Assembly: GCF_000150275.1 (NCBI RefSeq)
Contig: NW_002060946.1
Span: 5,618,597 to 5,682,596, forward strand
DNA length: 64,000 bases
Direction: 5' to 3'
Source of the DNA: Trichoplax adhaerens
Taxonomy: Eukaryota > Animalia > Placozoa
Part shown: one piece after another, positions 18,859 to 45,774 of the stretch
Position numbering within the stretch: position 1 is the stretch's first letter
How the letters are laid out: every line of letters begins with the position of its first letter
Notes under the pieces: model-generated
Seen by the model: the letters and a program-made list of their open reading frames with translations, nothing else
Told to the model about the DNA's origin: nothing
Database searches by the model: none
Program-made: the position numbers and the translations under genes

Positions 18859-19686
18859 TCAGTCTTCATCTTTTAAATCCGAGTTTGCGATATCAATATA
18901 CAACTGTAGTTGGCCGTTGATTTTCTTTGCTATAGATAAATACCTGTTAATAAAACAAGTCTGTCGTTATGAATACCAAAGAATCACTCTTGATTATATT
19001 TTGCTACATACAAAACGGTGTTTACTCGTAAATCAATCTTGGTCAATCAAATTATCTTTGTGCAATCGAGCACTTGCAAGTGTATTGTAGCTTCTCAATC
19101 TAGTTTAAATTTAGTAGGCAATCTGTCAATACTGCATTACTTACTTTCCTTTATCAATTACAGTGGCATCTTCACGATGAAGGATATAGCGACCACTAAT
19201 ATAATACATTGAATCTTTGATGATGACTCCATAACCATCGTAAAAATATCGACTTTGCAAGCCATATTCTTTACCCATAATGACCACTTCATCAAAATAT
19301 TCCGTAATGGCTAAAGATAGAACAAAAAAAACTGAAAATTTTCATAATAAAGACAATACGATATAAAATAATCAAGGAGTAGTAATTGATAGCCACACAG
19401 ATTCAATTAGTACAACTGATAATATCTGTTAACTTCTTATCTCTTCGACATTTTGAAATAATAGCAAAGTCATCTTGATGCTTTTATTTTGCACATTGAA
19501 AATCTTACCTTGCCTACCTACAATTTCGCAATGACCCGGAGGTAATAATACGGCGTCATCAGTAAATAAATGATGGATAGCGCCTAAGTCTTGTTGATTA
19601 AAAGCATCTTGTAACATTTTATTAAAAGCACTAATTTCCTTCTTCAGTAAAGGATCGACAACAAAATCAGATGTTTCACTTGACAT
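18859..19686 (-). CDS. NTF2/SnoaL-like (DUF4440/YybH-type) protein, paralog 1 (3 exons)
   Basis: MSSETSD...FNQQDLGAIHHLFTDDAVLLPPGHCEIVGRQ / AITEYF...DATVIDKGK / YLSIAKKINGQLQLYIDIANSD. Matches the family pattern F-N..D......Y/F-TDDA-x-L-PPG....G...I..Y and GKY....K...G.W....D..NS. Confidence 0.85.
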
Positions 19687-22600
19687 GATTAACTACAACG
19701 TTGCAGGTGTTCAAAATGCTCGCTATATAAAGAAAGGCCAAAATTTTGACAGTATTAGCAAATTATTCCATTGCTGCAATTAGACTATTTGTACTGTAAG
19801 ATTATGCAATAAAAGTATAATATAACTCAACTATTCATAAACGCATAGCAAGATGGCATTCATATCACCAATTCATGGTAGCATTGCAGCAGTAGCAATT
19901 AAGCGATTTCGCTTCTTTGCAAAACCTTGCAGTTTTTAAGTTGAAACAGAGTACAGACATGGACAAAATATGTAATTTGCAAGCGAAGATAGTATTCTAA
20001 ACTATGTATTTTAATTTTAATGCATTATTTTAGCTCACCTTAGCCTATAAAAGAGTTATTAACCTGATTATTTTATAAGTCTTTCCTTTCTAGTAGATAT
20101 TTACGAGGTGATGTCCTATTTTGCTGATGCAATAGGGGTTTTTATTAATTAAATGACGATATTTTCAGAGTTTTAGACGGCATGGGACTCAAAGGAGGAA
20201 CAAATAGTTCAATGATCTAACCATATGTTATGATGTACGGTTATTACTTCATTAAATATTAGTAATATTCCTTATTAGCATAAAATGATGATATAAATTA
20301 TATTATTTAACTGGAAGAAATTTTGCCTCCGTTACTGCAGACGCTGCGGATAGAATTAGATTTTCTATTTTACAGTATATGATTGGAATGTATAATTTCT
20401 TATTTTTAGGCATTAAACTTAGATATCAGTGTAACTGTAGTCTAACTAGCAAATAAACTTTGATCTAATACACGTTTATACGTATGATTAAGTAATACTA
20501 ATTCTATTATTAGCAGTATCGCTATGTCTGCATTCGCAGTTAGTTACACACGCCATTTCTAAAGTGACGAAAGTATTTGATTTTTATCGTAATGTTAAAT
20601 TAATTATCATCAATAAATGAAAATAGATCTAAATTGTATCGTCTAATCTAAAATTTAAAATAGATTTTATGAAGGAAGAAAACAGATCTATCGCATACAA
20701 ATTACTCTCTATTGCACTATCATACAGCGATTGATTAAAATTTCATCGATTTATTTGCCATATAATACTTGAAATGGAACTTACATCAATCTTAACGCAA
20801 TCACAGCCGGTATTAACGTGCCAGAATAATTTAATATCGTGCAGAAATCAAGCAGGTATGGTAAAATTTCAGATTTTCCTTCTTCCGCATTGAATATAAG
20901 AAAAGTATTTAGATTAGGGTAGTATCCCAATTCTTTACGGGCTACCTATGCAGGTCGTTTAACTGAAAGGTAATTTATTACTAGTAGCACTGCTTCCTAA
21001 GCATTTCAGCGAACACGGTATGCTGAGATTTATTTCTCTAGAAGGTGGCCAATATTGCAAACCATCCCTGTTGTAAACGCCCTTACCAACAATAGAGCTA
21101 TAGTAATTAATTAAATTAAACGAATCAAATTAAAAAATCTCTCCACTTTAGGATACACCTGAACACTATTTTTGCTCTATCAAATAAATCCATACAGATT
21201 GCTGGCTAAATTTAGCTTATACTATCCATTAATTATCAGAAAAATTCATTTATCAGCAATCATCATAGCTTGATAACGGCGTGTAAGAGAGCTCAGGAAT
21301 AGTCCTTTTCCTATTATACAATCAATATTAAACCTTTTATGACTAAGAAATGCAAATAGAATATCAATTGTTTCATGATAACTAATTTTAATTCTTAGCT
21401 GTATAGATTGAAATAGGCAATTTGGTTGAATTATCACAATTAATTTAACCATTAAGATAAATATCAAGGAAATATCTTTTTATGGCAATATCCTAGCTTT
21501 TATGCGTTAGTAATCAATATCATTCGTCGGATATAGCATTGCAGTAAAATATGGAGCTAGGATTATACTGAGATAGTTTTGCTATTCTTTCTTTATTTAC
21601 TATAGCTATGCAACGTGTTTACGATTTTTGTTTGTCATCCAACAGGTATGATCGGAGCACCCATTTGTAAATTGGGACTGACTGTTGCAATATTGCCGTA
21701 CAGTAGAGTAGTAATTCTTCAAAATACAAGGTGATCAACTCTTAAAATTAGCTCAAGATTGCTATAAGTGGATGTTACTTTATCCACTGTATAGTCTATA
21801 TAATTACTAGAAATGGCTATGATTACAACTATTGATAGCTATTGTAAGGTTGTCCTTTTTATGGCATGGTATCAAAAACTTTTTTGGCGTAATATTTACC
21901 TTATTATACAGATGGAAATGTTTTATATTTGATTTAATGATCCAATTAAAAGACGATAAACACGTGTGGAACAGAGTAGGCCAAATCAATACAGAGTAAT
22001 TCGTTAGTGGCTAAATGTAAAGATATTTATGTATGTATTGATATTGTGTTATTGGAACCGTAGGCCTACTACTAGGTAATACTTTGAGCTATGACATTAA
22101 AATATCAATTTATAATTAGAGTTATGTTTGATTAAAAGGCAATTATTTACGCTATAGTTACTTTCTTTACAATCTTTAAGGAACTTTTTAAGCTTAGACG
22201 ATATTATTTCATCTTGAGCTTACACCTATTGTCCCTTATTGAGTTAGTCTGCAGGACAGTACAAAAAAAAATTGAGGAGTGGGTTTTTATTTCCATCATT
22301 AGCATTTAGATTATGTCGCCCTCTTTTACTTGTATTAGACTTTATTCACATTGTTGATAGTCTAACCCTTGAAAAGTAGAAATAAAATTCTACTACGATG
22401 ATAGCAAGGTGAAATGGCGTCTTTGATATCTAACAGTACTTATAAATAACTTGTTCTTGATCTAGAGAAGTAGATATGAATGGCATTCGATCCTTTCAAT
22501 AGATTAAGGTTAACTAAACAGTTTAAGTCTTCGTGGCATCTCATGAAAGTAATTTATTGGTCTGCTTATTCTTTTCAATATAGAAAGACTTCGATACTAG

Positions 22601-23260
22601 TATAACGTAGCCAAAATTAGCTTTCTGTTGCTATACTAGTATATTGCTAAATTACTATTACAATAAGGAATCTCATCTATCGATACAACAGACTAAATAA
22701 ATAACCAGTAATCCTCTTACACCATAGATATGCATAGAATCATGTACAAAACGGCAATCACAATCCCTATTGCCAATCTATATATTTTATCCTTTTTTTC
22801 ATGGATCATCCTACATTCTACTTTTATCAAGTGTATCAAACCCATGGCAATCATGTCCAGACTGAATTAAGATAGCGACATACTTCAAGTTGGAGAGAGA
22901 CTAATGTAATCAATCATGGCTAAATCAGTCGACAAGTTGGATTCTATCTATCCGCGATAGAGCAATAATTGATATTTTCTAGTCTCCAAATTATTCATAT
23001 ACCATTGAAAACTTAATTATTGTGAATAGCTTTTTAAGCTTGTAACCTGTCATGATTGGTTCCCTAAATATATTAATAATTTAGATTGAATAAAAGAATA
23101 ACAATGATCATTTTAATTATATTGCTATTTTTTAAAAGTGATGGGGATTTAAAACTGTCCTTTCCAACAATGAGAAAGTTCTTTGTTTATTTAATTTAAT
23201 TAGAGTTATGTAAATAATACCGTACGATCTCGTGAAGAAAGAACCGATATTAAATATTAA

Positions 23261-23826
23261 GAAAGGTTTACCCGAAAATGTCCACTTATTAACATTGCAA
23301 AGATTTGATAATAATATATTATTGCGGTTGGAACATCAATTTGCTGTTAAAGAAGACAGCAAATTGTCTAAGCCAGTTACTGTGTCATTAAAGGTCAGGC
23401 ACATAAAAAATATTAATTGTAGTAAACATCTTTTATAATAAAATCAAGCCCAATACAAGAAGTGTGTGACATTCATAAGCTTAACTTAATTTTCTATCTT
23501 TCTTCAACAGAATTTGTTCAAATCTTTCAATATAACTAGTATTTCTGAAGTGACTCTGTCAGCTAATGCTGAAATAGGCCAATTAAAACCGCTTCAATGG
23601 AAAACACATGACACAAGTTCAGGTTTGATTTACCATTAAACAATAAATCTTGCTAAAGTATAATTTATTGGTCTTCATGTTTGGTAGTTTATGAATTCTG
23701 AAATTCGATAAAATTTTATCTTACATAGATAAGCTAAATTTGGAAAAAGTGATAGCTGAAAATCTAAACATCGATCTAAAAGCTATGCAGATTCGAACTT
23801 TCAATGTCACATTTACCCGCTATAAC
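23261..23826 (+). pseudogene. Duplicated 3' fragment (last three exons, first truncated) of the alpha-mannosidase gene
   Basis: [44 protein letters not shown] ... [14 protein letters not shown] is near-identical to 39292-39856; the rest of the gene is absent. Confidence 0.85.
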
Positions 23827-24764
23827 TAACAGAATACAACTAAATCTGTTTTTTAACCTTATAAAAATTATTCAAGTATACCCTAGTTGGATATTAACTA
23901 AAGAAATTATCGTTGAATTTCTTATGTTTGCATATTTTGTCGCTTGACTTAAAATATTAATTGTACTAGTTTATCAATTCTTTAGTGAATTATACTAAGT
24001 CACAAAATTAAGATTTATGTTTTTTCATAAAATGTTCTTTGTACTACTACTACTATCCTTTTAAACTAACATCAATTATTGATAAAACCTAAGTTTATTA
24101 CTAGTATTCATGAAATACTCATGACATGAAAACTGATATGATTCATTTTAGTCACCAATATTAAATCTATTTTTATCAGGTAAAACAGGTCTAGTTAAAT
24201 TTTGTGGAGTATTTCCTAATAATATAATCAAAAGAGCACAGGCAATATTTGTTACTACAATAGGATACATTTCAATTGCTTTATTTCAAGAGTTGCTAAA
24301 AGTTTCCAAAAGCTAATCTTTTAGTTACGTCTACAGCAATTACTAGCTACACCAAAAATGTAGCAGGTAACATAGCATCGACGATAAGACATTACAACTA
24401 ACACCAATAAGTACGAATCACTACACAATAAGTATAAATAATCAATGATACTACAGCTACGTTTAGGAAGCTGAAGCAGCATTGGAATTAGCTGAATCAG
24501 CGTAGATCTTCCATACACCGTTGTCTTTGTAGTATAAAGCAAGACCCCTAAGAAGACGTATTAATAAGAACAGATTAGGTTTCTTATCTACCCATTGCAT
24601 TCAAAATGCTATCAAGTAGCATAAATACGATATACTGTCTGACTGTTGATGTTGGACGATAAAAATTTTCAATATTGGCATCTCTACTTGTATATTGTTC
24701 TAGAATACTTACTTTCCGTTATCAAAGACAGATCCATCAGCCTTGTATAAGGTGTTGTTATAGA

Positions 24765-26628
24765 TTACGAAGCCTCTGTTGGCTTCGGCTCCGACTCCAA
24801 GACATCTTTCATCGATATTTCAGCACTGACAGCATTTACCTGTTGCTTTACCAAATTTGGATCCTAATAAATAATGAAATAATTATCATCATATACCGTA
24901 CAGTAACTGATTTAATAAGATCAATGGATGTCTCAAATATCTCCAATCATTGAATAACTACAGATAATGTTTAGTTAGTATTAACACATTCGTCGATAAA
25001 TCTAATTCATTATGGAGCTCACCAACCTCGCAAGGTTTCTTAGTATCGATTTTGTTTTCAGCCACGGTATTACTACCCTTATTTACGATCTGGCAACCGT
25101 TTTCAGGGGCTTTGATTTGTTCATTTATCGCTAAATTGGAAAGAAGAATAATGTATTAATTTCTATAAAATATCATTCCACCATTACAATGACTAACTAG
25201 ACACGTCCACAATCGATGTGATCACGACTAGATTCAATTAAAATAATAGCAATCTTAATAAATGACATCAGGCCAGACATTTTCTACGTATCCAGTAGGT
25301 AAAGATTGACAATAATATAGAATAGTTTCAATAGATTACAATTAACTGCACTATAGAGCAACTCCATCTCCATTAACTATGGTACCTCATCCTGCTCTAT
25401 AGTGCTTAAAATAATTAAACTATCAATAGTTTGTCTCAGCTAACTATTTAAACAATTCACTTTGATTCATCGAGAACTTTGACCTCTAACAATAAACGAT
25501 TCATGTAGGTTCATGATAGTAACCTCTAGGGACTGATGAAATATTTATATTGCAACCTTTTAATATTTAATAATATCGTCTGATTAATATGAACGTCATG
25601 CAAGTAATTTATCTACGCTCTCGATAGTCAATTAGCTTAGATTTAATTAACGTAGCGTGATTTTAAAATTATGACGTCTTAATAAATGACATTTTATCTA
25701 TTAACATTAGGTGGTAAAATAAGACCATAGAATAACCCTTCTATCCACGTGGATTACGATCGAAGTATGCATAAGAAAAATTTTTTTACTATGAATGGCC
25801 TAGATGCTCAATTTTCTATTACTTTATGAGGTATAAAAATTGAAATAATTATTATACCACGGCTTATCTTTTAGTGTTAACCTTAACCTTGATCGAACTC
25901 TACCGCGTAAAAACTTCTTTCTTACAAAAATTCTAAGCTTAGACTATTAAAGATGTAGCGATTTCATACGTCTTTAATACCGGCATCTTTAATTTCACTT
26001 TTTATCATTAATGCTGACACTCTATTCTATTGACATTCATACAGTATGTCAGATACTATTGTATGATAGTTACGTAGAATAAGCTAAAATATAGAGTGCA
26101 ATCAATATTCTAATAATTCCATCAGTTAGCAGCATATAGAATATGTTACATATCCTTTCCACTAAGACAATCCAAGACTATTACAAATAGGATATTGTAC
26201 ATGTTTAGGATTGAGATGAAATTTACTTGACTCTAGCTTCTATGTGTCAATATACCCTAATAATGATTACAGGATGTACAACTTAAAATTGATGGATATT
26301 TCTAAATTATCGCTACTAAAATAATAAAAATAGGTTCGATTGATCACCAAAAATACAATCCATTCAGCATTCAACAGGTAGGATAAATTAATCTAAGTCA
26401 GCGTATGAATAACTTATCCCTATTTTAATTATCTTACTTTTCGCTGTGTAATAAAGTCATGGTAAAATAAGATATTGCCATAAGTATATATCATTATTTT
26501 ATTGGAAAAACTGGAAGCTCAACCGATTTTAAGGATATCCCAAAACAAGAACCTGACGATTTAAAATGGCTTATCATGGCTAAACAGTACTCCTAATCTA
26601 TAATAAAAATTCATGACTTACCAGACAT
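24765..26628 (-). CDS. Remodelled duplicate of DUF4440 paralog 3; predicted novel 69-aa protein (alternatively a pseudogene, or TGA readthrough to 24463)
   Basis: Exon 1 ATGTCTG (26622-26628), exon 2 25130-25027 using donor GAG|gttggt, exon 3 from 24863. Translation: MSAINEQIKAPENGCQIVNKGSNTVAENKIDTKKPCEDPNLVKQQVNAVSAEISMKDVLESEPKPTEAS*. Confidence 0.55.
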
Positions 26629-26761
26629 GACTTTCTTGTATTCGAAATCAATTAGCAATAGTGTTCGGAAAAATGGATAAACAACTTAGGGGAAAGTTGT
26701 AGGAAACTATTGAACTGGCAGAGATTGGAGGAGAAGTGATTTTTTCCAGTAGTTGTAGGTC

Positions 26762-26768
26762 TTATATA
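26762..26768 (-). promoter_or_regulatory. TATA box of the duplicated gene
   Basis: TATATAA about 135 bp upstream of the ATG; copy of 36317-36323. Confidence 0.55.
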
Positions 26769-28084
26769 GCCTTAGGCCGGCATCATGTTGACGCCTTATG
26801 CTAATTTTTATTCTATTGCTCCTCCAGAAAGAGCCAATTAAGCATATACCATTTCAGTGGTGTCTGAAGAGGGGGGAGTAAACTAGTTATGGCTAACAAT
26901 TATTGTCCGATTATTGACATATCGATTAAACAAATCCTTAATATTTCATTGCTAGTGTTCTAAACCATTGAGTTGAACTTTTAGTACTGAATCTATTCTA
27001 AATAAGCCAAGCTGTCCAGATGTTGCTTTAGTTTTTACTTAATATTTCTGTTCGCCTTATTTCGATGCGTTGATATTAGCAATAGAGTTATACCATAAGA
27101 CGGTTTGTTGTTTAAGTCATTCCGATGAAAAATGTTATACAGGTTGGCATCGGATAACAATATTCTTAAGATATGAATAGAATTGAATGGTACAGCAATA
27201 CCTTGAGTGCTCATTCTTTAACAGCGAGACTTATAACCAATATTGACATAAATGAGGTTAGTAAATATACGGAAAAGTTAAAATATATCCAATTTAAATA
27301 ATGTTGATATATCGACGAATAATTTTTTAGTTTTAAAGTAAAATTTATTATTAACCCTTACACTTACAATGGAATTCTTTTTAATTTTACTCGAAGTATT
27401 TAGGTATAAGTAAAATTGTATAGTTCATGCTTGCAGTTTCGTTTAATCTTTCAATTTTATCGATTTATTTTTATTCTATTTTAACCGATAAAGTATTGCC
27501 ATGGCACTTTGTTTAATAACGTAATAACACTTCATTTGCTAATTATATTATTATGACATATGCTGATTTTATTTCCGGTAAATTTTTGCAACCAAAATCA
27601 ATCTAATTATCGTATTCAGAGTCTTTGCATGGCAGCATATGTACTATTAATGCCAATAGCTTATAAGTATGAGTGATTTAACAGGAAGGCTAATGGATAA
27701 AGATAGATAGATTGTTGTTTATTTCTCAATCTCAAAATGTCAATCTTTGATTAGCAATGGAAAGTAAGGACGAATTTTATTTGTCTAGTGAATAAGATCG
27801 GGCTAAAATCGAGAGAGCAATTTATTTATGTCCTGGGTAGTTAAGTATCATGAGCAATCTTATCGATTATTTAATCATTTCGATTGCTTTCCACATAGAA
27901 TTGCATTATTGGCCGTCAATGATTCATTGTTAAAATTATAATATAATTCAAAATTTTCAATGGTTTAAAAATTCCATTTATTTACTTGTACTCACGCAAC
28001 TAGTTGTATTTAATTGCAACATCTGTTAAAATTATTTCTCACTTTTTGTCATATCCGAGCAATACAGAAACCACCCGATCAAAA

Positions 28085-29049
28085 ATGGCAGGTAATTGAA
28101 AAAAATTCCCTTGAAAATTAATACAGTTATACTAGTTACAGCAATCATTAGAAAGAAGTTGATGTCAGAATTATGAATAGTAGCATCAACAATCCATTTT
28201 AAAAGCAGTTTTTTTAAAGTCAGCTGATGTTATTAGTAGTTTTTTTTAACCAACTGATGTTATTAGCAGTTTTTTTTAACCAGCTGATGTTATTATCTAC
28301 GATAGCATAAAATTAAATTAAAAATAACTGCAGCTAGTTAATGGGTGTAGCTCAACATAGCTGAAAATGAAGAACGTTAAAGTCGATTTTTGAAGCCATT
28401 TTTTAAATAGGAATTTTTATTAATTACTAGATATCAAGACTGCAATCATTGCTGCTGAGGAATCTTATGAAGCTGCCATCAATGGCACTGACCTAGATGC
28501 CATCGTCAACCACTACACTGATGATGCACGTGTATTACCTCCAGGTGCAGAAACAATCTCTGGAAAAGAGGGTAAATATTATTTTTCGATCACTCTTTTG
28601 CTCCTATCACTGAACTATGCGATTCTATCCTCTGCGACAAATTGTTGGCTTAAAACTAAACGGTATGCCTTTATATTTTTCAGCTATTAAGGAATACTTT
28701 GCTTCTTTAGCTGCATTGGGTATTGCTAAAAGTGAATTTGTAACTGAAGAATGTGGCGGTGAAGGCACTCATGGTTTCTTGCGTTATAGCAGCAAACTGT
28801 ACAAGGAGGATGGATCACTTTTCGAAGAAGGAAAGTACGTATCAAGAGTTGATGGTATCTTTCACAGGATATGATTCTAGTTTTCCTAATTTATAAATCT
28901 TTTCTAATCTAACAACATGGATCATTAATCCACTATTCATATTATTATCATGCTTTTATTTTCATTGCAGGGGTGTTGTCTTGTATAGCAAGGACAGTGA
29001 TGGCACATGGAAGATCTTCCTCGATGTTGCCAACTCTAATAAGCAATAA
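28085..29049 (+). CDS. NTF2/SnoaL-like (DUF4440/YybH-type) protein, paralog 2 (4 exons)
   Basis: ATGGCAG|gt; DIKTAIIAAEESYEAAINGTDLDAIVNHYTDDARVLPPGAETISGKE; AIKEYFASLAALGIAKSEF...DGSLFEEGK; GVVLYSKDSDGTWKIFLDVANSNKQ*. Confidence 0.88.
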
Positions 29050-30417
29050 ACACCATTACATAGGTGTAACTTGGTCATGTTGAAAAATAACCAACAAACA
29101 TGACCAATTAAGTAGCTATTACTATTATCGTATGCCTTTCATGATTGAGATATTAAGCATCGAAATGCATATTTCTAAAAATATGTATGTATGATGTTGC
29201 TGTGTGATGTACTATTACGGGTAATTTTATATTTCATTAGCAATTGGTTTAGAATGACAGTAGTCCAATTCTAACTTACTTTATTCTATACTAGTTTGCA
29301 GATATTTAATGATCACGATACTCTGGTAAAATTAGTGTAGCTTGTATTACAAATGGAAGTGATACACAGAATGAGGCAAGATATAATCAGATAACGCATT
29401 AATTTTCTCAATGACTGCTATTAGCTATCGATCGCGTTAGATCAATAGTACCGTATATCAAGATTTGAATTACAACAAGAGCTATGAAGATTCTAGCTCT
29501 GTTTCAGCCTCTTTAAAGTAATGATAGCTAGCAAAATGTGATATTGTTTATTGCAAATTAATGATTTTGATACTCACTTTGGCTTAGTATAGAAGATATT
29601 CCAATTTTTAGAGCATCATCAAGTGTGTGTTTTGAATTGTCAGTCAATGTGAAGAGTGATCAAAAATAAAAAAAAAATTAAGGCAATTTGTCTATGCATT
29701 TTATATTTCATGGAATGGGTTTCCCATAGTAAAATTTAAAGTTGAATAAATGATGAAATTTTTGCTTAACAGCTCTACAAATTACGATAGAGAAATTACA
29801 GTCTTGAACTATAAATCAATCGTGTTCTATATTTAAAAACTTGTCAGACGTTCGGTCGATGTCTGATAATTAGAGAAGTGGTATTGAATCGATACTATAC
29901 AATTATAAATCTTTACTAATTATAGATCTGTAAGTCCAAGTTTAATCTATTTTATATTCGAACTTAATATAATGTTACAGAGCTTATGTCTACGAGATAT
30001 TACTGTTCCCTAGTCCTTGACCTCTTCTAAAATCCGAAAATTGATGATATGATTAATGCATAGTGTACTGCGGTATATGTAAACTTAATGATTGATCTAA
30101 TTTGTTTCAGAATCTATCGGTGGACCAGATCGATCGATTTAATTTTAAAATTCTTTTTCTTAGTCCTGACAGGTGATCAATTTATTTAAAGGCTATTACC
30201 AGTCTATCAATTTAAATATCCGTTTTAAATAAACGTTGTAACGCATGGCCACAATTATAGTAAAATATACGAATGCGAAATAGAATTATTTCCCTGCCTT
30301 AAGTAGGATCGCAGCGTATTAATTTATATGCCATACTGGGATAGTTTACTAATATAGTCGCAGAAATTCGATTCCCGATACTATATCTGATATGTAGCAG
30401 CCATTCCTGAATCATGA

Positions 30418-30660
30418 AATACATTTGATGTTGTATTAGCGTGCTAAAAGATAATACTTGAGTCAAAACTCACTAAGATTGCAGTCTATAGCCCAACATG
30501 CTCTTCTCATCATCTTATCTGCTGTGCACTTTAAAATACTGGCGAATACCTTTGATGTTGTTTTAGCATGCTAAAAGATAATATTTGAGTTAAACTCACT
30601 AAGATTGTAGTTTACAGCCCGACATGCTCTTCTCATCATCTTGTCTATTATACACTTCAA
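30418..30660. repeat. Tandem duplication, ~128 bp unit
   Basis: tttgatgttgt.ttagc.tgctaaaagataata.ttgagt.aaactcactaagattg...catgctcttctcatcatctt occurs twice. Confidence 0.75.
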
Positions 30661-30829
30661 ATACTAACAATCCCCTATAACTAGGCTGTAGTTAACTCAC
30701 CCTGCTATTCCGACTAGATTAATAGCCAGCAATTTCACAAAAATTACTACTATTTCTAGTGGAGTATGTCAACATCAATTCGTGTAACTCAAATAACATT
30801 GTCTTAATGATATTACCTATACAGGGTAT

Positions 30830-31445
30830 AGTCGGAAACATAGATAAAATTGTTATCGATCAATGATAAAACAACTAATCTAGTGATAAACCATCGTAGT
30901 GACGATGGTTGTTCAAGTCGAATTATTTTACTAAGATACTAAGCGTGCAGTAGTCATTATTGCTGTAAAAAGTTGTTGATCTGATCAGTATTGATGGAAG
31001 AGTCCAATTTAACTCGAATTACCTTGCTAAGATACTAGGCCTAAAGTAGCCATTATTAGATAAAAACATAGATCGGATGACTATCGATCAATTACAAAAG
31101 CAAGTTATCCAGCCATAAGCTACCTTCATTACGATATTTATTCAAGTCGAAGTACTTTGTTAAGATATTTTTTGTAACTATTAAAAGGTGATGATCCGAA
31201 CAGTATTAATGGATGAGTCTACTTCAACTCGGATTACTCTGCTTGGATTACACGTAAAGTAGCCATTATGAGATAGAAACATGAATCAAATGGTTATCGA
31301 CTAATTACAAAACAAGTTCTATAGCGATCTTCACTACAATATTTATTCATGTCCAATTGCTTTACTAAGATACTAGGCGTAAAGTAGCGATTATTACTAT
31401 AAAAAGGGTGTTGATTCAATCACTATTAATGAAAGAGTGCAGTTC
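30830..31445. repeat. Degenerate tandem repeat, ~220 bp unit, about 3 copies
   Basis: aaacata/gat...tatcgatcaatt..aaa.caa and ctaagatacta.gcgt.aagtag.cattat motifs recur. Confidence 0.55.
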
Positions 31446-34400
31446 CTTTTCGATCGAGCAATTTCTGCCGTAAGGAAGGTTAGTAATCTCGAAGATATGA
31501 GAGATGAACATAGAGCTTCGGATACTTATTTTATCTGATCTGATCATGGATTAAAATCCATGATCAGAATTATAGGAAAATGACCTTCAACTATTTTTCT
31601 CAAGAAATAAACAATCCCTGCAAAACAATTAGACTCTGATTTAGAAGATCAGGAGACTTGAGTCATGATAAAGTGTATCGCGACTTTAATATAGTCCAAA
31701 AGTAACTAATTCAACTGTAATCGACTACGTTTTCTATTTAGAATATAGTATTTGTTTTAATTAATGGCCATTTAAATAGAACAGTTATAGCAATTGGATG
31801 CCCGTAGGCTATGCTATCATCAAATAATATCATCGTCAAGTATTATTCTCATCTAGATTGCTGCTATTGCTAGTGGGTTGATTATCAAACTAGGAACAAA
31901 GCTTTTGCTCGCTTTGAAGCAACTATTGATCAAGTTATCGTTGTACCTTTTCATTTCGCTATTATCCTACCATCACTATCGCTGAACTTTGAGAATAGAA
32001 TCAATGAAAATGAAATAATGTCATTTGTTATTGAACGATAAGAACTGATGCATAAGCGTAAAAATAAAATTGCATTTTAAGCAGTGCTGTTAGAATCGAA
32101 ATTGTGTTACTATCTTAATTTTATCGCTGAATTGGTTAATTATCGGTAGAAAAAATTTTCATCACGACTAGACGATTGTAGATAAGTTTTAAATTAACGA
32201 ATGGATTATGAAGTCATTGACTTTAGTTTTCGATCCTGTTACGGTAGGATGTCTATCCGTTGAGTATGCTACTCAGCGTCGATATTGGGCATCTACGTTC
32301 AATATTTAGTCACTTGCTTCATGGGTAATATACTTTCTTGGCTATAGTATAGAATGATATTTCTTGTATCTGTTGATAGAAAAATTTCTGACTTAGCTAT
32401 TCAGAAATTCCTATATTTCCTCTGAATAAAAGCATTTTAAATAGTCCTACTTAATATTAATAATGTTATTCATACGATGTTGATTTTCGACGTATGATCA
32501 TTTTACTATAGTACTTTGCTACAAAATATCATGGATTGAGACTAGTTTATTTATTATTGTTATTAAAGGCTTAATATGAGAGATCTAGCTCTATCTCTTG
32601 ATTTTCATCATACTCACATTTATATTTAAAGTCAGCACTCAATTTAAAATGTATCTTTGATCTAACTTGAACTATTAATCGAGGAATATCGTATAAATAA
32701 GAATATGACTACTTCCATTACTATTCTTGTCGTTTATGCAATCTATACAGGCTATATAGAAATAATTAGCAGATGATTGCGGTTAACAACACTTATTGTA
32801 TATTAGTAACATGTAGGGACATTGTATTTCATGATCTTTTATTTATAATCTAAGAATGAGATTAGCATCGGATGGTTATAAATCAAGTTAAATCGATGTT
32901 ATTCCACATATAAATATTAAAGCTTTACCCGATTAGTATAGGTCCTAGATGATCAATCATCAAACGAGTTATTGTATGTAATCATGAGTAGCCGATACTA
33001 CTTGTCTTATGGATTAATAGCTTACTTTTATCTCAACCTACAATTAATGCTTGTATTGTCATCAACATGGTTTAATGCTTTGCACGGCTGATTAACCATT
33101 AAGTGCGAGTATTGATCATGAAATGATACGATTTAATTATGAACCATCGATGCCACTCGTCTTATGATAGGTTATTAAGCTCTAGATTTCTCATAGATAA
33201 TCATAGACTACCTCTAGTTGTCAATGTAAGAAATATTTTATTACTGTCAAAGCTAAATTTTTACTGTTGCACGCCGGGTGCACTTTGATTTTGCCTCATT
33301 TCTATAGCTAATAAATCATAAGAATAAGTCATGAAATAAACGATTTATCCGTGGCCTATCAATGCTACTTGTCTCCTTTGGATCAAATTGTCTATTTTTA
33401 CCTTGACCTATAGATAATACTTACATAATACGTTCCTATGTTGAAAAGGATATTATACAATTAAAATAATAAGTTCAAAGTGATATAATAGCGAAGTAAG
33501 ATATTGGAACAAAATCCTTGACAACTAGAGTAATTTTCTTAATTAAATGGAATGTAAGTAGCTATTAAATGCTCGAAGGCATCAACAGTTTATTTAAAAT
33601 AAAACATCGATGAACATGTATTACAATGAAGTAAATAAGCTGATAATAGCATAGAACTATCGTCCTGATTGGTTTACAAGCTTTAAAGACTTTAAATTCT
33701 ATTTACCTTATTTTACTTTCCCTGTAGATGATAGCGAATCATTTTTCTAATATAGCTATCAGCTACTTTGTACAGTATGTTTTAAAATCTTTTTTTTAAA
33801 TCATAAAAACACGTTTTCTCTTTCGAAATAGCCTCAGAAATAGATCAAGAATGTTCCGCTAATATCTTTTTTACTATAGCAAAGATCGTAGCGAACTTTG
33901 ACTGCATTCTCGCTTGTGATTTTACCTCATCGTCATTGTTTAATAGACTTGATTTCGATAACGGAAAACTTTAAAGTTTTCCTCTCTTAAATTACCCTTG
34001 GGATATCTTAGGAATGTCCTATAAAATTCTTCTAGAATGACAATGATGGTAGACGATAACGGACCTTGATCACATTTCCACCTCCTATTTAATCTTATTT
34101 GCAATCGATTAGATTTGAAAATTTTGTACTTGATTTATATTATCTAGGTAGCTGATTAAGCAGTTATCATTTTAGCTTGGCTATAATATGATACTGGTAC
34201 TGTAGATCAAGCATTGACGAATGTATCTATGATTGAAATCTACTATCGCATTAGGAACTAATAAGCCCGAGTAATATTATGGTGGCTTAGTTACACAGTA
34301 AAATGATGCAGTAGAAGAAGCAAGAATTAATATAAAATAGCCTTAACAGAATTCTCTTGATGTATTGATAACTAATCAATCAGGGTAGTCATCATGATCT

Positions 34401-36316
34401 AGCTAAGTTATAACACAATTTTGTTGATCAAGCATTAATTAATCGAGAGCATCAGAACCTGAAATTTTTTGTCGTATTGTAAATTATTTAATCTATAAAT
34501 TCGAGTAATCGTCATTTTAGCTTAATTGTAATAGGATATTGCAGATAAAGCAGTTATTAATGTAAAACATTCATCACTAAAAATCTGTTGTTGCATCGAT
34601 GATAATTAATAGAGCTCTAGATAAAATTTTATTAATTAAAACTAAAATATCGATAGGAGATAACGTAACTGCTTTAAAATTAAAGCGATTATCGGCAGGT
34701 GAAGATTGATTATGTTCCATGTTATCATAATTAGGCTATTTCTGGCTATCAATTCAGTTTTCGAGCTATAGTTGCTATCGTGCTATTCCTAATTTTATAT
34801 AAATTAGAAGAAATTGATTCAATTCCAATTCGATGATTACGTCTAGACCTAACAGGTTAGTTTATTGCTTTGCAGTTGATATCAAGAGAATGATGGAAGT
34901 AGGCAGATCTCAACTTATAATTGGTAAGGGAGGAAGTGATTATCTGCGTAACTAAGTCAAGCAGACAAATTATTGGTAGCAGATCTTAAGCATTATTGAT
35001 TTAATATTTAATATCGGTTCTTTCTTCACGAGATCGTACGGTATTATATTCGTATTTAAATTTAAAGCTTTTACATAACTCTAATTAAATTAAATAAACA
35101 AAGAACTTTCTCATTGTTGGAAAGGACAGTTTTAAATCCCCATCACTTTTAAAAAATAGCAATATAATTAAAATGATCATTGTTATTCTTTTATTCTATC
35201 TAAATTATTAATATATTTAGGGAACCAATCATGACAGCTTACAAGCTTAAAAAGCTATTCACAATAATTAAGTTTTCAATGGTATATGAATAATTTGGAG
35301 ACTAGAAAATATCAATTATTGCTCTATCGCGGATAGATAGAATCCAACTTGTCGACTGATTTAGTCATGATTGATTACATTAGTCTCTCTTCAATTTGAA
35401 GTATGTCGCTATCTTAATTCAGTCTGGACATGATTGCCATGGGTTTGATACACTTGATAAAAGTAGAATGTAGGATGATCCATGAAAAAAAGGATAAAAT
35501 ATATAGATTGGCAATAGGGATTGTGATTGCCGTTTTGTACATGATTCTATGCATATCTATGGTGTAAGAGGATTACTGGTTATTTATTTAGTCTGTTGTA
35601 TCGATAGATGAGATTCCTTATTGTAATAGTAATTTAGCAATATACTAGTATAGCAACAGAAAGCTAAATTTTGGCTACGTTATACTAGCATCAAAGTCTT
35701 TCTATATTGAAAAGAATAAGCAGACCAATAAATTACTTTCATGAGATGCCATGAAGACTTAAACTGTTTAGTTAACCTTAATCCATTGAAAAGATCGAAT
35801 GCCATTCATATCTACTTCTCTAGATCAAGAACAAGTTATTTATAAGTACTGTTAGATATCAAAGACGCCACTTCACCTTGCTATCATCGTAGTAGAACTT
35901 TATTTCTACTTTTCAAGGGTTAGACTATCAACAATGTGAATAAAGTCTAATACAAGTAAAAGAGGGCGACATAATCTAAATGCTAACGATGGAAATAGAA
36001 GTCCACTCCTCATTTTTTTGTACTGTCCTGCAGACTAACTCAATAAGGGACAATAGGTGTAAGCTCATGATGAAATAATATCGTCTAAGCTTAAAAAGTT
36101 CCTTAAAGATTGCAAAAGAAAGTAACTATAGCGTAAATAATTGCCTTTTAAATCGATATGTCAATAATCGGACAATAATTGTTAGCCATAACTAGTTTAC
36201 TCCGCCCTCTTCAGACACTATTGGAATGGTATATGCGTAATTGGTTCTTCCTGGAACAATACGGAGCAATAGAATAAAAATTAGCGTAAGGCGTCAACAT
36301 GATGCCGGCTCAAGGC

Positions 36317-36323
36317 TATATAA
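36317..36323 (+). promoter_or_regulatory. TATA box of paralog 3
   Basis: ggcTATATAAgacc about 135 bp upstream of ATG 36456. Confidence 0.55.
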
Positions 36324-36455
36324 GACCTACAACTATTGGAAAAATCACTTCTCCTCCAATCTCTCCCAGTTCAATAGTTTCCTACAACTTTCCCCTAAGT
36401 TGTTTATCCATTTTTCCGAACACTATTGCTAATTGATTTCGAATACAAGAAAGTC

Positions 36456-38654
36456 ATGTCTGGTAAGTCATGAATTTTTATTATAGATTAGGAGTGCTGT
36501 TTAGCCATGATAAGCCATTTTAAATCGTCAGGTTCTTGTTTTGGGATATCCTTAAAATCGGCTTAAGCTTCCAGTTTTTCCAATAAAGTAATGATATATA
36601 TATACTTATGACGATATCTTATTTTACCATGACTTTATTACACAGCGAAAAGTAAGATAATTAAAATAGGGATAAATTATTTATTCGCTGACTTAGATTA
36701 ATTTATCCTACCTGTTGAATGCTGAATGGATTGCATTTTTGGTGATCAATCGAACCTATTTTTATTATTTTAGTAGCGATAATTTAGAAATATCCATCAA
36801 TTTTAAGTTGTACATCCTGTAATCATTATTAGTTTTTATTGACACATAGAAGCTAGAGTCAAGTAAATTTCATCTCAGTCCTAAACATGTACAATATCCT
36901 ATTTGTAATAGTCTTGGATTGTCTTAGTGGAAAGGATATGTAACATATTCTATATGCTGCTAACTGATGGAATTATTAGAATATTGATTGCACTCTATAT
37001 TTTAGCTTATTCTACGTAACTATCATACAATAGTATCTGACATATGAATGTCAATAGAATAGAATGTCAGCATTAATGATAAAAAGTGAAATTATAGATG
37101 CCGGTATTAAAGATGTATGAAATTGCTACATCTATAATAGTCTAAGCTTAGAATTTTTGTAAGACAGAAGTTTTTACGCGGTAGAGTTCGATCAAGGTTA
37201 AGGTTAACACTAAAAGATAAGCCGTGGTATAATAATTATTTCAATTTATATACCTCATAAAGTAATAGAAAATTGAGCGTCTAGGCCATTCATAGTAAAA
37301 AAATTTTTCTTATGCATACTTCGATCGTAATCCACGTGGATAGAAGGGTTATTCTATGGTCTTATTTTACCACCTAATGTTAATAGATAAAATGTCATTT
37401 ATTAAGACGTCATAATTTTAAAATCATGCTGCGTTAATTAAATCTAAGCTAATTGACTATCGAGAGCGTAGATAAATTACTTGCATGACGTTCATATTAA
37501 TCAGACGATATTATTAAATGTTAAAAGGTTGCAATATAAATATTTCATCAGTCCCTGGAGGTTACTATCATGAACCTACATGAATCGTTTATTGTTAGAG
37601 GTCAAAGTTCTCGATGAATCAAAGTGAATTGTTTAAATAGTTAGCTGAGACAAACTATTGATAGTATAATTATTTTAAGCACTATAGAGCAGAATGAGAA
37701 ACCATAGTTAATGGAGATGGAGTTGTCCTATAGTGCAGTTAATTGTAATCTATTGAAACTATTCTATATTATTGTCAATCTTTACCTACTGGATACGTAG
37801 AAAATGTCTGGCCTGATGTCATTTATTAAGATTGCTATTATTTTAATTGAATCTAGTCGTGATCACATCGATTGTGGACGTGTCTAGTTAGTCATTGTAA
37901 TGGTGGAATGATATTTTATAGAAATTAATACATTATTCTTCTTTCCAATTTAGCGCTTCAAGAAGAAATCAAAGCCGCTGAAAAGAAATGCAACGAGGCC
38001 ATTAATAAAGGTGACGTTGATGCAGTCGTTGGTTGCTATACTGACGATGCTAAAATCTTAGCACCTGGTAGCCCAATGATCTCTGGCAAGGCTGGTGAGT
38101 TCCATAATGAATTAGATTTATCGACGAATGTGTTAATACTAACTAAACATTATCTGTAGTTATTCAATGATTGGAGATATTTGAGACATCAATTGATCTT
38201 ATTAAATCAGTGACTGTGCGGTATACGATGATAATTATTTCATTATTTATTAGCAATCAAAGAGTATTTCGCTGGCTTAGCTGCTCTCGGTATTGGAAAA
38301 TCGGAAACAGATGTCCTTGAAGTTGGAGGTGGAGGCAACAACGCCTACGTAATCTATAACAACACCTTATACAAGGCTGATGGATCTGTCTTTGATAACG
38401 GAAAGTAAGTATTCTAGAACAATATACAAGTAGAGATGCCAATATTGAAAATTTTTATCGTCCAACATCAACAGTCAGACAGTATATCGTATTTATGCTA
38501 CTTGATAGCATTTTGAATGCAATGGGTAGATATGAAACCTAATCTGTTCTTATTAATATATCTTCCCAGGGGTCTTGCTTTATACTACAAAGACAACGGT
38601 GTATGGAAGATCTACGCTGATTCAGCTAATTCCAATGCTGCTTCAGCTTCCTAA
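36456..38654 (+). CDS. NTF2/SnoaL-like (DUF4440/YybH-type) protein, paralog 3 (4 exons)
   Basis: ATGTCTG|gtaagt; 37954-38094 ALQEEIKAAEKKCNEAINKGDVDAVVGCYTDDAKILAPGSPMISGKA; 38254-38404 AIKEYFAGLAALGIGKSETDVLEVGGGGNNAYVIYNNTLYKADGSVFDNGK; 38570-38654 GLALYYKDNGVWKIYADSANSNAASAS*. Confidence 0.88.
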
Positions 38655-39291
38655 ACGTAGCTGTAGTATCATTGATTATTTATACTTATTGTGTAGTGAT
38701 TCGTACTTATTGGTGTTAGTTGTAATGTCTTATCGTCGATGCTATGTTACCTGCTACATTTTTGGTGTAGCTAGTAATTGCTGTAGACGTAACTAAAAGA
38801 TTAGCTTTTGGAAACTTTTAGCAACTCTTGAAATAAAGCAATTGAAATGTATCCTATTGTAGTAACAAATATTGCCTGTGCTCTTTTGATTATATTATTA
38901 GGAAATACTCCACAAAATTTAACTAGACCTATTTTACCTGATAAAAATAGATTTAATATCGGTGACTAAAGTGAATCATATCAGTTTTCATGTCATGAGT
39001 ATTTCATGAATACTAGTAATAAACTTAGGTTTTATCAATAATTGATATTAGTTTAAAAGGATAGTAGTAGTAGTACAAAGAACATTTTATGAAAAAACAT
39101 AAATCTTAATTTTGTGACTTAGTATAATTCACTAAAGAATTGATAAACTAGTACAATTAATATTTTAAGTCAAGCGACAAAATATGCAAACATAAGAAAT
39201 TGAACGATAATTTCTTTAGTTAATATCCAACTAGGGTATACTTGAATAATTTTTATAAGGTTAAAAAACAGATTTAGCTGTATTCTGTTAG

Positions 39292-45304: not shown

Positions 45305-45774
45305 TTGCAATCAATACCAATCCAATAAACAACTAGGAGATCGCTCGTGAGCGAGGAAACGATAGCCTGGCCACAAGATGTGGATAAATATGTAATGGCT
45401 AGCAGGCTAACAGCAAGAATAAACGTTGAAGGAGGAGAATTGCGTTCGGCTCGATAGGTGAGAATTGTCAATAGAAGAAGATTGCCCTTGCTCCCTTATA
45501 TCGTATACCCATCGGTATTTTAACAGCGTTACTATAGAAATACAAAGTCAATAGAAGAAGTGAAGGTGTTGTTGAGCCCTTGGGTTGGGAAGGGGGGGGG
45601 GTGTCATAATAACGCGATGTTGCGCAAACAGTAGTCAATACAACAGTCAAATACTGTATTACAATGGCTACTAGCTGGTATTTGCTAGTATGTATGTCCT
45701 TCCGGTCATAATCTACTCACGTGACTAAGGTCGACCGTGATGATACAAAATGGCCAATAAATAGTGGTGATGGT

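What the first reader, a model, noticed from the sequence alone, without database searches (positions are those of the whole stretch)
24463..26628. Newborn gene candidate: coding exons rewritten while introns stay ~97% identical to the parent
Seen: this gene is an inverted copy of paralog 3 (36456-38654). The promoter, introns, last exon and 3' flank are near-identical; intron 2 has 5 differences in 159 nt by manual count. Exon 2 (108 vs 141 nt to the ancestral donor) and the first 95 nt of exon 3 are heavily diverged, and the divergence starts and stops at the splice junctions. The ancestral donor is weakened (gtgagt to gtgagc) and a new one appears 4 nt upstream (GAG|gttggt). Using it puts exon 3 in a frame that is open to TAA 24765-24767, giving the 69-aa MSAINEQ...SEPKPTEAS. 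Divergence ends at the codon just before that stop. In the last 11 codons all 10 substitutions fall at codon positions 1 or 2 of the new frame. The stop lies 52 nt upstream of the last junction, at the 50-55 nt NMD boundary. Inference: neutral decay would hit introns equally. The pattern instead implies intense positive selection on a new peptide (as in accelerated exon evolution of venom genes), or gene conversion between the inverted arms with the new coding sequence protected by selection.
Basis: partly seen in the sequence, partly recalled or inferred. Interest (0 to 1): 0.93.

Follow-up and report, generated by a model that had tools for sequence, protein, structure and literature searches.

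The report
Fast-evolving short gene from recent duplicate
In a Trichoplax genome, a recently duplicated small enzyme-like gene kept its introns almost unchanged. Its translated part was rewritten into a new short reading frame, which is transcribed and spliced through a newly created splice site.

Summary
**Observation: confirmed.**

- Copy A (24463-26628, minus strand) and copy B (36456-38654, plus strand) are inverted duplicates of a DUF4440/SnoaL-like gene.
- Introns and flanks are 96-99% identical. Exon 2 is 62% identical and the first 96 nt of exon 3 are 60% identical (odds ratio 32, P about 1e-65).
- The divergent block runs from codon 4 to the codon before a new stop at 24765-24767.
- No donor for the divergent exons exists elsewhere in this genome. 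An outgroup paralog places most of the change on A.

**New evidence from public runs**

- Spliced RNA contigs in two runs from two studies skip 163 nt, not 159. The new donor GAG|gttggt is therefore used.
- Other haplotypes differ from the reference mainly inside the same block. One has about 8 differences in 84 nt of exon 2 against about 1 in 950 nt of intron.
- All ten listed variants fall at codon positions 1 or 2.
- In exon 3, dN is 0.59 against dS 0.04 in the new frame. Exon 2 shows no such periodicity, and its dS is also raised.

**Verdict**

This is a real, expressed, rapidly evolving derivative gene. It is most likely under diversifying selection on a new peptide of about 69 aa. Translation is unproven, and the cause of the acceleration is not fully resolved. 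It is a new variant of the known "accelerated evolution of coding regions" pattern.

The parts
26762..26768 (-). TATA box of copy A, shared with copy B.
   Evidence: TATATAA read directly from the sequence. It lies 26-32 nt upstream of where RNA contigs end, at 26722-26736.
26629..26736 (-). 5' UTR. The transcript start is near 26722-26736.
   Evidence: RNA contigs of X8 and X11 end at 26722 and 26736. X8 runs into sequencing adapter at 26722.
26622..26628 (-). Exon 1 coding part: the ATG plus 4 nt. It is identical to copy B.
   Evidence: RNA joints start at 26622.
25131..26621 (-). Intron 1, 97.9% identical to intron 1 of copy B.
   Evidence: In the DNA-like run X1, 25131 C>T destroys the AG acceptor in one haplotype.
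25027..25130 (-). Exon 2 as spliced through the new donor (104 nt). It is 62% identical to B exon 2, with 33 nt of in-frame deletions.
   Evidence: The RNA joint 24862|25026 (cut +1) skips 163 nt in X11 and X8.
25109..25111 (-). Alternative acceptor. The AG is at 25111-25110 and the exon then starts at 25109. It lies 21 nt inside exon 2, is in frame, and is used in the variant haplotype.
   Evidence: The joint 25109|26622 has CT..AC ends in X11 and X8, with only 28-29 nt on the short side.
25017..25026 (-). The donor region. The new donor gttggt is at 25026-25021. The ancestral donor gtgagc is at 25022-25017 and is weakened at its +6 position.
   Evidence: Sequence. Only the 163-nt skip was seen in RNA contigs.
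24864..25022 (-). Intron 2 body, 96.9% identical to copy B.
24768..24863 (-). The 5' part of exon 3: 32 codons in the new frame, 60% identical to B. It carries a +1 and a -1 indel relative to B.
   Evidence: A single-sequence fold predicts a helix at residues 2-22 followed by a disordered tail.
24765..24767 (-). The new stop codon TAA, 52 nt upstream of the last exon junction.
24713..24764 (-). The rest of exon 3. It was formerly coding and is now 3' UTR. It is identical to B.
24548..24712 (-). Intron 3 (165 nt), 97% identical to B.
   Evidence: The RNA joint skips 165 nt. That joint could also come from B transcripts.
24463..24547 (-). Exon 4, the former C-terminal coding sequence. It is identical to B and is untranslated in A's new frame.
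36456..38654 (+). The parent copy B, an intact DUF4440/SnoaL-like gene. Its exons are 36456-36462, 37954-38094, 38254-38404 and 38570-38654.
   Evidence: Its canonically spliced transcripts appear as loose ends.
28433..29040 (+). The outgroup paralog used to polarise the changes. Its Trichoplax sp. H2 orthologue is P0001.

Best explanation
Copy A is the daughter of a recent inverted duplication of a DUF4440/SnoaL-like (NTF2-fold) gene in Trichoplax. Non-coding divergence between the copies is about 3%.

**How the gene was rebuilt**
- After the duplication, A lost the parental fold.
- 33 nt were deleted in frame from exon 2.
- A C-to-T change created a new 5' splice site 4 nt upstream of the old one.
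- A +1 and a -1 indel in exon 3 first restore the frame and then shift it, ending at a pre-existing TAA.

**What results**
- The gene is transcribed from the unchanged promoter and spliced through the new donor.
- It carries an open frame of about 69 codons, or about 62 codons in a haplotype that also moved its exon 2 acceptor.
- This frame has diverged at least 20 times faster than the surrounding introns. It is still the most variable part of the locus among haplotypes.

**Most likely cause (inferred)**
Diversifying or positive selection on the encoded short peptide. The peptide is hydrophilic and partly helical. Complex multi-nucleotide mutation events probably contributed in exon 2.

**Shown:** the structure, the exon/ORF-limited divergence, the polarity of change, transcription, use of the new donor, and haplotype variation.

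**Inferred:** translation, selection as the driver, and any function.
For: - **Divergence limited to the block:** 79 of 203 mismatches inside against 64 of 3324 outside.
- **Block matches the new ORF, not the exons:** 141 nt of exonic sequence after the new stop have 0 differences.
- **Polarity:** an outgroup paralog agrees with B at 46 of the A-versus-B differences and with A at 13.
- **Daughter copy:** only the B arm adjoins the intact GH38 gene.
- **No donor:** neither DNA nor protein searches of the genome find a source for the block.
- **Transcription and splicing:** spliced RNA contigs in X11 (a true RNA-seq library) and X8 join 24863 to 25027. They skip 163 nt, have GT..AG ends, and 84 nt lie on the shorter side of the joint.
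- **Codon pattern in exon 3 nt 24-95:** differences at positions 1, 2 and 3 are 13, 9 and 1 of 24 each (P = 0.001, or 0.003 for any phase). dN is 0.59 and dS 0.039, a ratio of about 15. The phase follows A's new frame across the -1 deletion.
- **Open frame:** the frame stays open in only 6% of simulations that apply the same number and spectrum of random substitutions.
- **Haplotypes:**
  - X2 differs at 6 sites in the block and at 0 in 187 adjacent intron nt.
  - The X11/X8/X1 haplotype differs at 8 of 84 nt of exon 2, against about 1 in 950 nt of A-type intron 1.
  - All 10 listed variants are at codon position 1 or 2. None makes a stop or a frameshift.
  - 3 of X2's 6 variants are the B-like ancestral state.
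- **Frame kept after acceptor loss:** a haplotype with a destroyed acceptor uses the next AG, 21 nt downstream and in frame.
Against: - Exon 2 and the first 24 nt of exon 3 show no codon periodicity. Exon 2's dS is about 0.4, more than 10 times the intron divergence, and selection on protein does not predict that.
- Four changes within 8 nt (25067-25074) look like one complex event rather than serial point substitutions.
- The peptide has no Pfam hit, no homologue and no annotated protein in public databases.
- Translation is untested.
- The stop lies at the 50-55 nt boundary for nonsense-mediated decay.
- The haplotype data come from assembled contigs, which drop variants. Twelve variant sites were not displayed by the tool.
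- The exon 1 to 25109 joint has only 28-29 nt on one side.
- The periodicity segment was chosen after looking at the data.
Confidence: 0.5

Rival explanations
1. **Concerted evolution plus selection.** A and B are older than their introns suggest. Repeated gene conversion between the inverted arms keeps homogenising the non-coding parts and the 3' exons. This happens between the paralogs and therefore also among the alleles. Conversion tracts that enter A's functional block are removed by selection or blocked by heterology. This is the opsin-type pattern.
For: - Identity along the arms is uneven: 96% in the promoter, 97.9% in intron 1, 99.1% in the 3' flank, and 226 nt with no difference next to exon 2.
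- Exon 2 dS is about 0.4, which suggests greater age than the introns.
- Gene conversion between neighbouring paralogs was already reported elsewhere in this genome by an earlier follow-up (s1-747287). It was not re-tested here.
- Introns are nearly invariant among haplotypes while the block varies.
Against: - In exon 3 nt 24-95, dS is 0.039, the same as the introns.
- Intron 2 is only 159 nt. It would have to be converted with both tract ends within a few nt of the exon borders.
- This explanation still needs selection on the block, so it overlaps with the main explanation rather than replacing it.
Confidence: 0.22
2. **A targeted or RNA-mediated mutational process.** The block is contiguous in the spliced mRNA, at roughly nt 10-210. 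It was rewritten by error-prone copying through an RNA or cDNA intermediate, or by another transcript-linked hypermutation, without any need for a functional peptide.
For: - The block is contiguous only after splicing.
- All codon positions are hit equally in exon 2, and its dS is raised.
- Clustered multi-nucleotide differences separate the haplotypes.
- The transition share falls from 67% outside the block to 47% inside it (P = 0.018).
- Unexplained acceleration of synonymous sites is on record for trappin paralogs (PMC2831891).
Against: - Intron 2 is retained, whereas cDNA-mediated conversion normally removes introns (established knowledge from yeast, not tested here).
- There is no deaminase-like or adenine-specific spectrum.
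- The block stops at the new stop codon although the exon continues.
- Exon 3 shows strong codon periodicity.
- No such mechanism is known in animals.
Confidence: 0.1
3. **An expressed pseudogene.** A is a decaying, still-transcribed duplicate. The open frame, the periodicity and the coincidence with the stop codon are chance. The non-coding similarity is due to recent conversion.
For: - The NTF2 fold is destroyed, and there are frameshifts and a premature stop relative to the parent.
- No homologue or annotation exists.
- The open frame survives in 6% of random simulations, which is not decisive on its own.
Against: - Neutral decay cannot outrun the introns by 20-fold or more.
- Three of the four block borders coincide with splice junctions within a few nt.
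- The periodicity has P about 0.003.
- Ten of ten listed haplotype variants are non-synonymous, and none breaks the frame.
- The haplotype that lost its acceptor re-spliced in frame.
Confidence: 0.15

Closest known systems
Accelerated evolution of coding regions in young multigene families, such as the trappin/REST genes (PMC2831891). From my own knowledge, also crotaline venom PLA2 genes and conotoxin genes.
   Same: - Recently duplicated genes whose introns, non-coding exons and flanks are far more similar than the protein-coding part.
- dN exceeds dS in part of the gene.
- In armadillo and pig trappins the synonymous sites are also accelerated 'by unknown mechanisms'. Exon 2 here behaves the same way.
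   Different: - Those genes keep their reading frame, fold and secretion signal. Here the parental NTF2 fold is abandoned.
- The frame changes twice, a new splice donor is used, and the product is a short peptide without a signal sequence.
- The divergence is about 40% against 3%, more extreme than the published values I read.
- The host is a placozoan.
New coding sequence by frameshift in a duplicate ('frameshift translation' origin of novel proteins; from my own knowledge, not checked in a paper here).
   Same: A duplicate acquires indels and a splice shift. Part of the product is then read in a frame different from the parent's, and a pre-existing out-of-frame stop ends the new ORF.
   Different: Here the in-frame parts have also been rewritten. 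The substitution pattern after the shift follows the new frame, which suggests selection after the shift rather than only a frameshift event.
Intron homogenisation by gene conversion with exons kept apart by selection, as in the primate L/M opsin genes (from my own knowledge).
   Same: The paralogs have more similar introns than exons. They lie close together, as an inverted pair, which makes conversion likely.
   Different: - Opsin exons differ at a few tuned sites. Here about 40% of sites differ, with indels.
- dS in exon 3 is not raised above the introns.
DUF4440/SnoaL-like NTF2-superfamily proteins (the parent family).
   Same: - Copy B and the paralog at 28433-29040 match DUF4440 and SnoaL_2.
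- A keeps the promoter, the exon structure and a recognisable remnant of the first helix.
   Different: A's exons give no Pfam hit. The C-terminal beta-sheet exons lie after the stop.

Membership tests
DUF4440 / SnoaL-like (NTF2 superfamily) | Profile match over the roughly 105-residue domain. | tested here: not met
   - A's exon 2 and exon 3 peptides give no Pfam family at E <= 1.
- Parent B's exon 2 matches DUF4440 and SnoaL_2 at E = 3e-4. This is a partial match because a single exon was searched.
- The paralog's H2 orthologue P0001 passes the curated cut-offs.
DUF4440 / SnoaL-like (NTF2 superfamily) | The C-terminal beta-sheet part of the cone-shaped fold is encoded in frame. | tested here: not met
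   In the spliced form seen in RNA, the frame ends at 24765-24767. The beta-sheet exons are identical to B but lie after the stop and out of frame.
Accelerated evolution of coding regions in young duplicates | Coding divergence significantly greater than intron and flank divergence. | tested here: met
   38-40% against 1-4% (odds ratio 32, P = 2e-65).
Accelerated evolution of coding regions in young duplicates | dN/dS above 1. | tested here: inconclusive
   - Exon 3 nt 24-95: about 15.
- Exon 2, codons 1-18: 0.85.
- Pooled over the confidently aligned codons: 3.0.

The segments are short and the exon 2 alignment is uncertain.
Accelerated evolution of coding regions in young duplicates | The gene is expressed. 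| tested here: met
   A-specific spliced contigs occur in X11 (RNA-seq) and X8.
Frameshift-derived new coding sequence | Part of the ORF is read in a frame other than the parent's. | tested here: met
   The first 8 codons and the last 11 codons of the exon 3 part are out of the parental frame. The cause is the -4 donor shift together with the +1 and -1 indels.
Frameshift-derived new coding sequence | The new frame is translated. | not testable with these tools
   No ribosome-profiling or proteomic data could be queried. The indirect evidence is the periodicity, the open frame and the non-synonymous haplotype variants.
Conversion-homogenised paralogs with selectively protected exons | Synonymous divergence in the protected exons exceeds intron divergence. 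| tested here: inconclusive
   Exon 2 dS is about 0.43, which meets the feature. Exon 3 dS is 0.039, which does not.
Nonsense-mediated-decay target | The stop lies more than 50-55 nt upstream of the last exon junction. | tested here: inconclusive
   The distance is 52 nt. A-specific spliced contigs are nevertheless present. The rule for placozoans is not known to me.

The most novel reading that the evidence does not exclude
Trichoplax has a process that rewrites the translated or spliced part of a gene much faster than its introns, and it is still active. This would be exon- or ORF-targeted hypermutation, or RNA-templated patch repair. The same pattern appears at two time scales: between the paralogs (40% against 3%) and between haplotypes (about 10% against about 0.1%). 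Synonymous sites in exon 2 are hit as hard as the others.
Probability: 0.1. Interest if true: 0.9.

Novelty: new variant of a known kind. Interest (0 to 1): 0.66.

Why it matters
**A new gene caught in the act**
- This is an unusually clean case of a new gene arising in an early-branching animal.
- The parent, the daughter, the neutral yardstick (the introns), the new splice site, the frame changes and the transcript are all visible in one 15-kb locus.
- Several haplotypes suggest that the change is still going on.

**A sharp question it can answer**
- The open question is whether selection alone can drive coding sequence 20-fold or more faster than linked neutral sites, or whether a mutational mechanism helps.
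- That question has stayed open since the venom-gene and trappin cases.
- Here it can be tested, because Trichoplax is clonal, culturable and has a small genome.

Tried and rejected
**Explanations considered and rejected**
- **Ectopic conversion from another paralog.** DNA and exon-wise protein searches of the whole genome found only the locus itself and B.
- **Assembly collapse.** Independent contigs bridge the A-type exons to the shared introns.
- **Deaminase or adenine-specific (DGR-like) mutagenesis.** All twelve substitution types are present and none dominates.
- **Introns kept similar by embedded RNA genes.** There is no Rfam match in 22000-40000. Introns are no more conserved than the flanks.
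- **Introner-type recently inserted introns.** Intron positions and phases are shared with the two older paralogs, and the flanks are just as similar.

**Searches that came back blank**
- phmmer with B's exon 3 gave only P0001, the Trichoplax sp. H2 orthologue of the neighbouring paralog.
- The open frame around A's exon 2 found nothing in 5.8 billion proteins.
- Neither A nor B therefore seems to be annotated anywhere.
- Papers on Trichoplax together with DUF4440 or SnoaL: none found.

**Steps that could not be run**
The H2 and other placozoan loci could not be fetched, so no cross-species dN/dS was possible.
It was redone from window coordinates.

**Handling of the spliced model**
- The spliced model was searched and folded exon by exon, by reference only. 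The joined model was not sent to any search or fold tool.
- A local script read the two exon pieces in series only to test whether the frame stays open.
- The single-sequence fold of the 32-residue exon 3 peptide gave a helix at residues 2-22 with mean pLDDT 76. This is weak evidence only.
Full report
**What the window is**

- The window is G000:C1411:5618597-5682596, from a 105.6-Mb genome in 1414 contigs with 33% GC.
- The only database relative of the local gene family is named 'Trichoplax sp. H2' and is 86-96% identical, exon by exon, to the window's paralog.
- An earlier follow-up note on this genome also calls it Trichoplax.
- I therefore treat it as a Trichoplax genome. From the assembly size and contig number I take it to be the T. 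adhaerens reference, but that last step rests on my memory.

**Anatomy of the locus**

Four genes of one small family lie within 20 kb:

| Gene | Coordinates | Strand |
|---|---|---|
| Older paralog | about 18877-19647 | - |
| Copy A | 24463-26628 | - |
| Outgroup paralog | 28433-29040 | + |
| Copy B | 36456-38654 | + |

- The family is DUF4440/SnoaL-like, with the NTF2 fold. B's exon 2 gives partial hits. The H2 orthologue of the 28433 paralog, P0001, passes the curated cut-offs for SnoaL_2 and DUF4440.
- All four genes share intron positions and phases.
- A and B sit in a 4.8-kb inverted repeat.
- The repeat also contains the last exon of a GH38 alpha-mannosidase. The rest of that gene adjoins only the B arm, at 40271-41056 on the minus strand. 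The A arm holds an orphan fragment at 23232-23438.
- B is therefore the parental locus and A the daughter.

MAFFT alignment of A against B, by feature:

| Feature | Identity |
|---|---|
| Promoter | 96.0% |
| Exon 1 | 7/7 |
| Intron 1 | 97.9% |
| Exon 2 | 62.0%, plus 33 gap columns |
| Intron 2 | 96.9% |
| Exon 3, first 96 nt | 60.0% |
| Rest of exon 3 | 55/55 |
| Intron 3 | 97.0% |
| Exon 4 | 86/86 |
| 3' flank | 99.1% |

- The contrast is 79 of 203 mismatches against 64 of 3324 (odds ratio 32, P = 2e-65).
- The borders are sharp. There is no difference in the 226 nt of intron 1 next to exon 2. The divergence starts at the third base of exon 2, runs up to both ends of intron 2, and stops at 24770.
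- The block is not simply 'the exons'. It is the new open reading frame: 141 nt of exon after the new stop have no difference at all.
- Transitions make up 67% of differences outside the block and 47% inside it (P = 0.018). No single substitution type dominates.

**How the frame was rebuilt**

- Exon 2 keeps the parental frame but has lost 33 nt.
- A gct-to-gtt change creates a GT 4 nt upstream of the old donor. The old donor has changed from gtgagt to gtgagc.
- With the old donor, exon 3 hits a TGA after 13 codons.
- With the new donor the reading is 4 nt short. A +1 insertion early in exon 3 restores the parental frame, and 'DVLE' is still shared with B.
- A 1-nt deletion then shifts the frame again, and reading ends at a TAA that already exists in that frame in B.
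- The result is 37 + 32 codons.

**Polarity and source of the change**

- At sites where A and B differ, the outgroup paralog agrees with B 46 times and with A 13 times. Nearly all the change is therefore on A's lineage.
- Neither the divergent DNA nor its translation matches anything else in the genome.

**Transcription and splicing**

- In X11, a true random-primed RNA-seq library, one contig lies on exon 3 (from 24740), on exon 2 and on exon 1 with the 5' UTR. The same is seen in X8, which comes from a different study.
- The exon 2-exon 3 joint skips 163 nt with GT..AG ends and has 84 nt on its shorter side. That is the new donor (25027 joined to 24863), not the old one, which would skip 159 nt.
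- No such joints occur in the DNA-like runs X1 and X2, so there is no sign of a retrocopy.
- B is also expressed with canonical splicing. The evidence is the loose ends at 26622 and 24769, which carry B exon sequence.
- The tool warns that contig depth cannot rank expression, so I make no quantitative claim.

**An unexpected result: the block is also the most variable part among haplotypes**

*Run X2*
- X2 looks like DNA. Its depth is even through the introns, and the A-specific parts sit at about half the depth of the parts shared with B.
- It differs from the reference at 25119, 25107, 25050, 25029, 24863 and 24839. All six sites are inside the block.
- It shows no difference in the 187 intron nt on the same contigs.

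*The haplotype in X11, X8 and X1*
- This second haplotype differs at 8 of 84 nt of exon 2. Four of these lie within 25067-25074.
- X1's A-type intron 1 contigs (records 4 and 5) differ at 1 of about 950 nt.
- X1 also has 25131 C>T, which destroys the intron 1 acceptor. The RNA contigs of this haplotype join exon 1 to 25109, using the next AG, 21 nt downstream and in frame. That joint has only 28-29 nt on one side.

*What the variants share*
- By my mapping onto the frame, all ten listed variants fall at codon position 1 or 2 and change the amino acid.
- None creates a stop, and no indel is listed inside the frame.
- Three of X2's six variants are the B-like state, so the reference haplotype is the more derived at those sites.

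*Background and limits*
- H1 and H2 genomes are 99.1% identical overall, and each carries two alleles (PMC6057997). Three haplotypes are therefore expected.
- Contigs drop variants, and 12 variant rows were not displayed.

**Is it selection on a peptide?**

*For*
- In exon 3 nt 24-95, differences fall 13, 9 and 1 at positions 1, 2 and 3 of A's frame (P = 0.001, or 0.003 for any phase).
- The conserved phase follows A's new frame across the -1 deletion, not B's frame.
- Nei-Gojobori estimates give dN 0.59 and dS 0.039. The dS equals the intron divergence.
- With the same number and spectrum of random substitutions, the frame stays open in 6% of trials.
- The haplotype variants are all non-synonymous.

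*Against*
- Exon 2 has no periodicity (17/34, 12/35, 17/35). Its dS is about 0.4 in the 18 confidently aligned codons.
- The first 24 nt of exon 3 behave the same way.
- The cluster of four changes in 8 nt looks like a single complex event.

*Conclusion*
- Selection on the peptide explains where the block begins and ends, and it explains the exon 3 pattern.
- It does not explain the raised synonymous change in exon 2.
- Published trappin paralogs show the same puzzle. Coding regions are faster than introns, with synonymous sites accelerated 'by unknown mechanisms' (PMC2831891).

**The product**

- A's exon peptides have no Pfam match and no database relative.
- The exon 3 part folds, from a single sequence, as one helix (residues 2-22) with a disordered tail and mean pLDDT 76. 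This is weak evidence.
- There is no signal peptide by eye.
- The function is unknown. My guess is a short cytosolic peptide that keeps a remnant of the parental first helix. This is inference only.

**Verdict**

- The daughter copy is expressed and uses the predicted new donor.
- The block coincides with a new short reading frame and is still diversifying among haplotypes.
- The best reading (about 0.5) is a young derivative gene under diversifying selection on a new peptide.
- Concerted evolution of the non-coding parts (0.22), a transcript-linked mutational process (0.10) and an expressed pseudogene (0.15) remain possible. The first of these overlaps with the main reading.
- The kind of phenomenon is known, as accelerated evolution of coding regions in young duplicates. 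This case is an extreme and unusually complete variant, in a placozoan.

**Limits of this work**

- The joined spliced model was not sent to any search or fold tool. Exons were handled one by one, by reference.

Noticed in passing
window 23232-23438 (+), and 40271-41056 (-): The repeat carries the last exon of a GH38 alpha-mannosidase (the Glyco_hydro38C2 domain, E = 0.0013). The rest of that gene (Glyco_hydro_38C, 68 bits) adjoins only the B arm. The A arm therefore holds an orphan gene fragment, which marks A as the daughter copy.
   Followed up: partly
window 22132-23214 vs 35070-36151: The two arms are circularly permuted. This 1.08-kb segment follows the gene in arm A but precedes the promoter in arm B. 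It has only these two copies in the genome, so it is not a dispersed repeat. This is a separate first-stage finding (s1-806466).
   Followed up: partly
window 26736 (run X11): One RNA contig joins the start of the 5' UTR to the antisense of B's exon 3. This is probably a cDNA hairpin or template-switch artefact of a highly expressed gene.
   Followed up: no
window 43520-44748 and 45774-46546: Two long tandem-repeat arrays showed up in the self-comparison. The first has copies roughly 70-75 nt apart at about 80% identity. The second has a 69-nt period at about 90% identity.
   Followed up: no
window 36456-38654 and 24463-26628: Neither copy B (an intact 4-exon gene with a 7-nt first coding exon and a 1.5-kb first intron) nor copy A has a matching protein in the 5.8-billion-protein collection. 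Both are transcribed, so both appear to be unannotated.
   Followed up: partly
window 24300 leftwards (run X8, record 24): A 2-kb RNA contig runs from exon 4 through the 3' flank and about 1.7 kb beyond 24300. Either the 3' UTR is long, or the contig merges with transcription of the mannosidase fragment or a neighbour. The library is unstranded.
   Followed up: no
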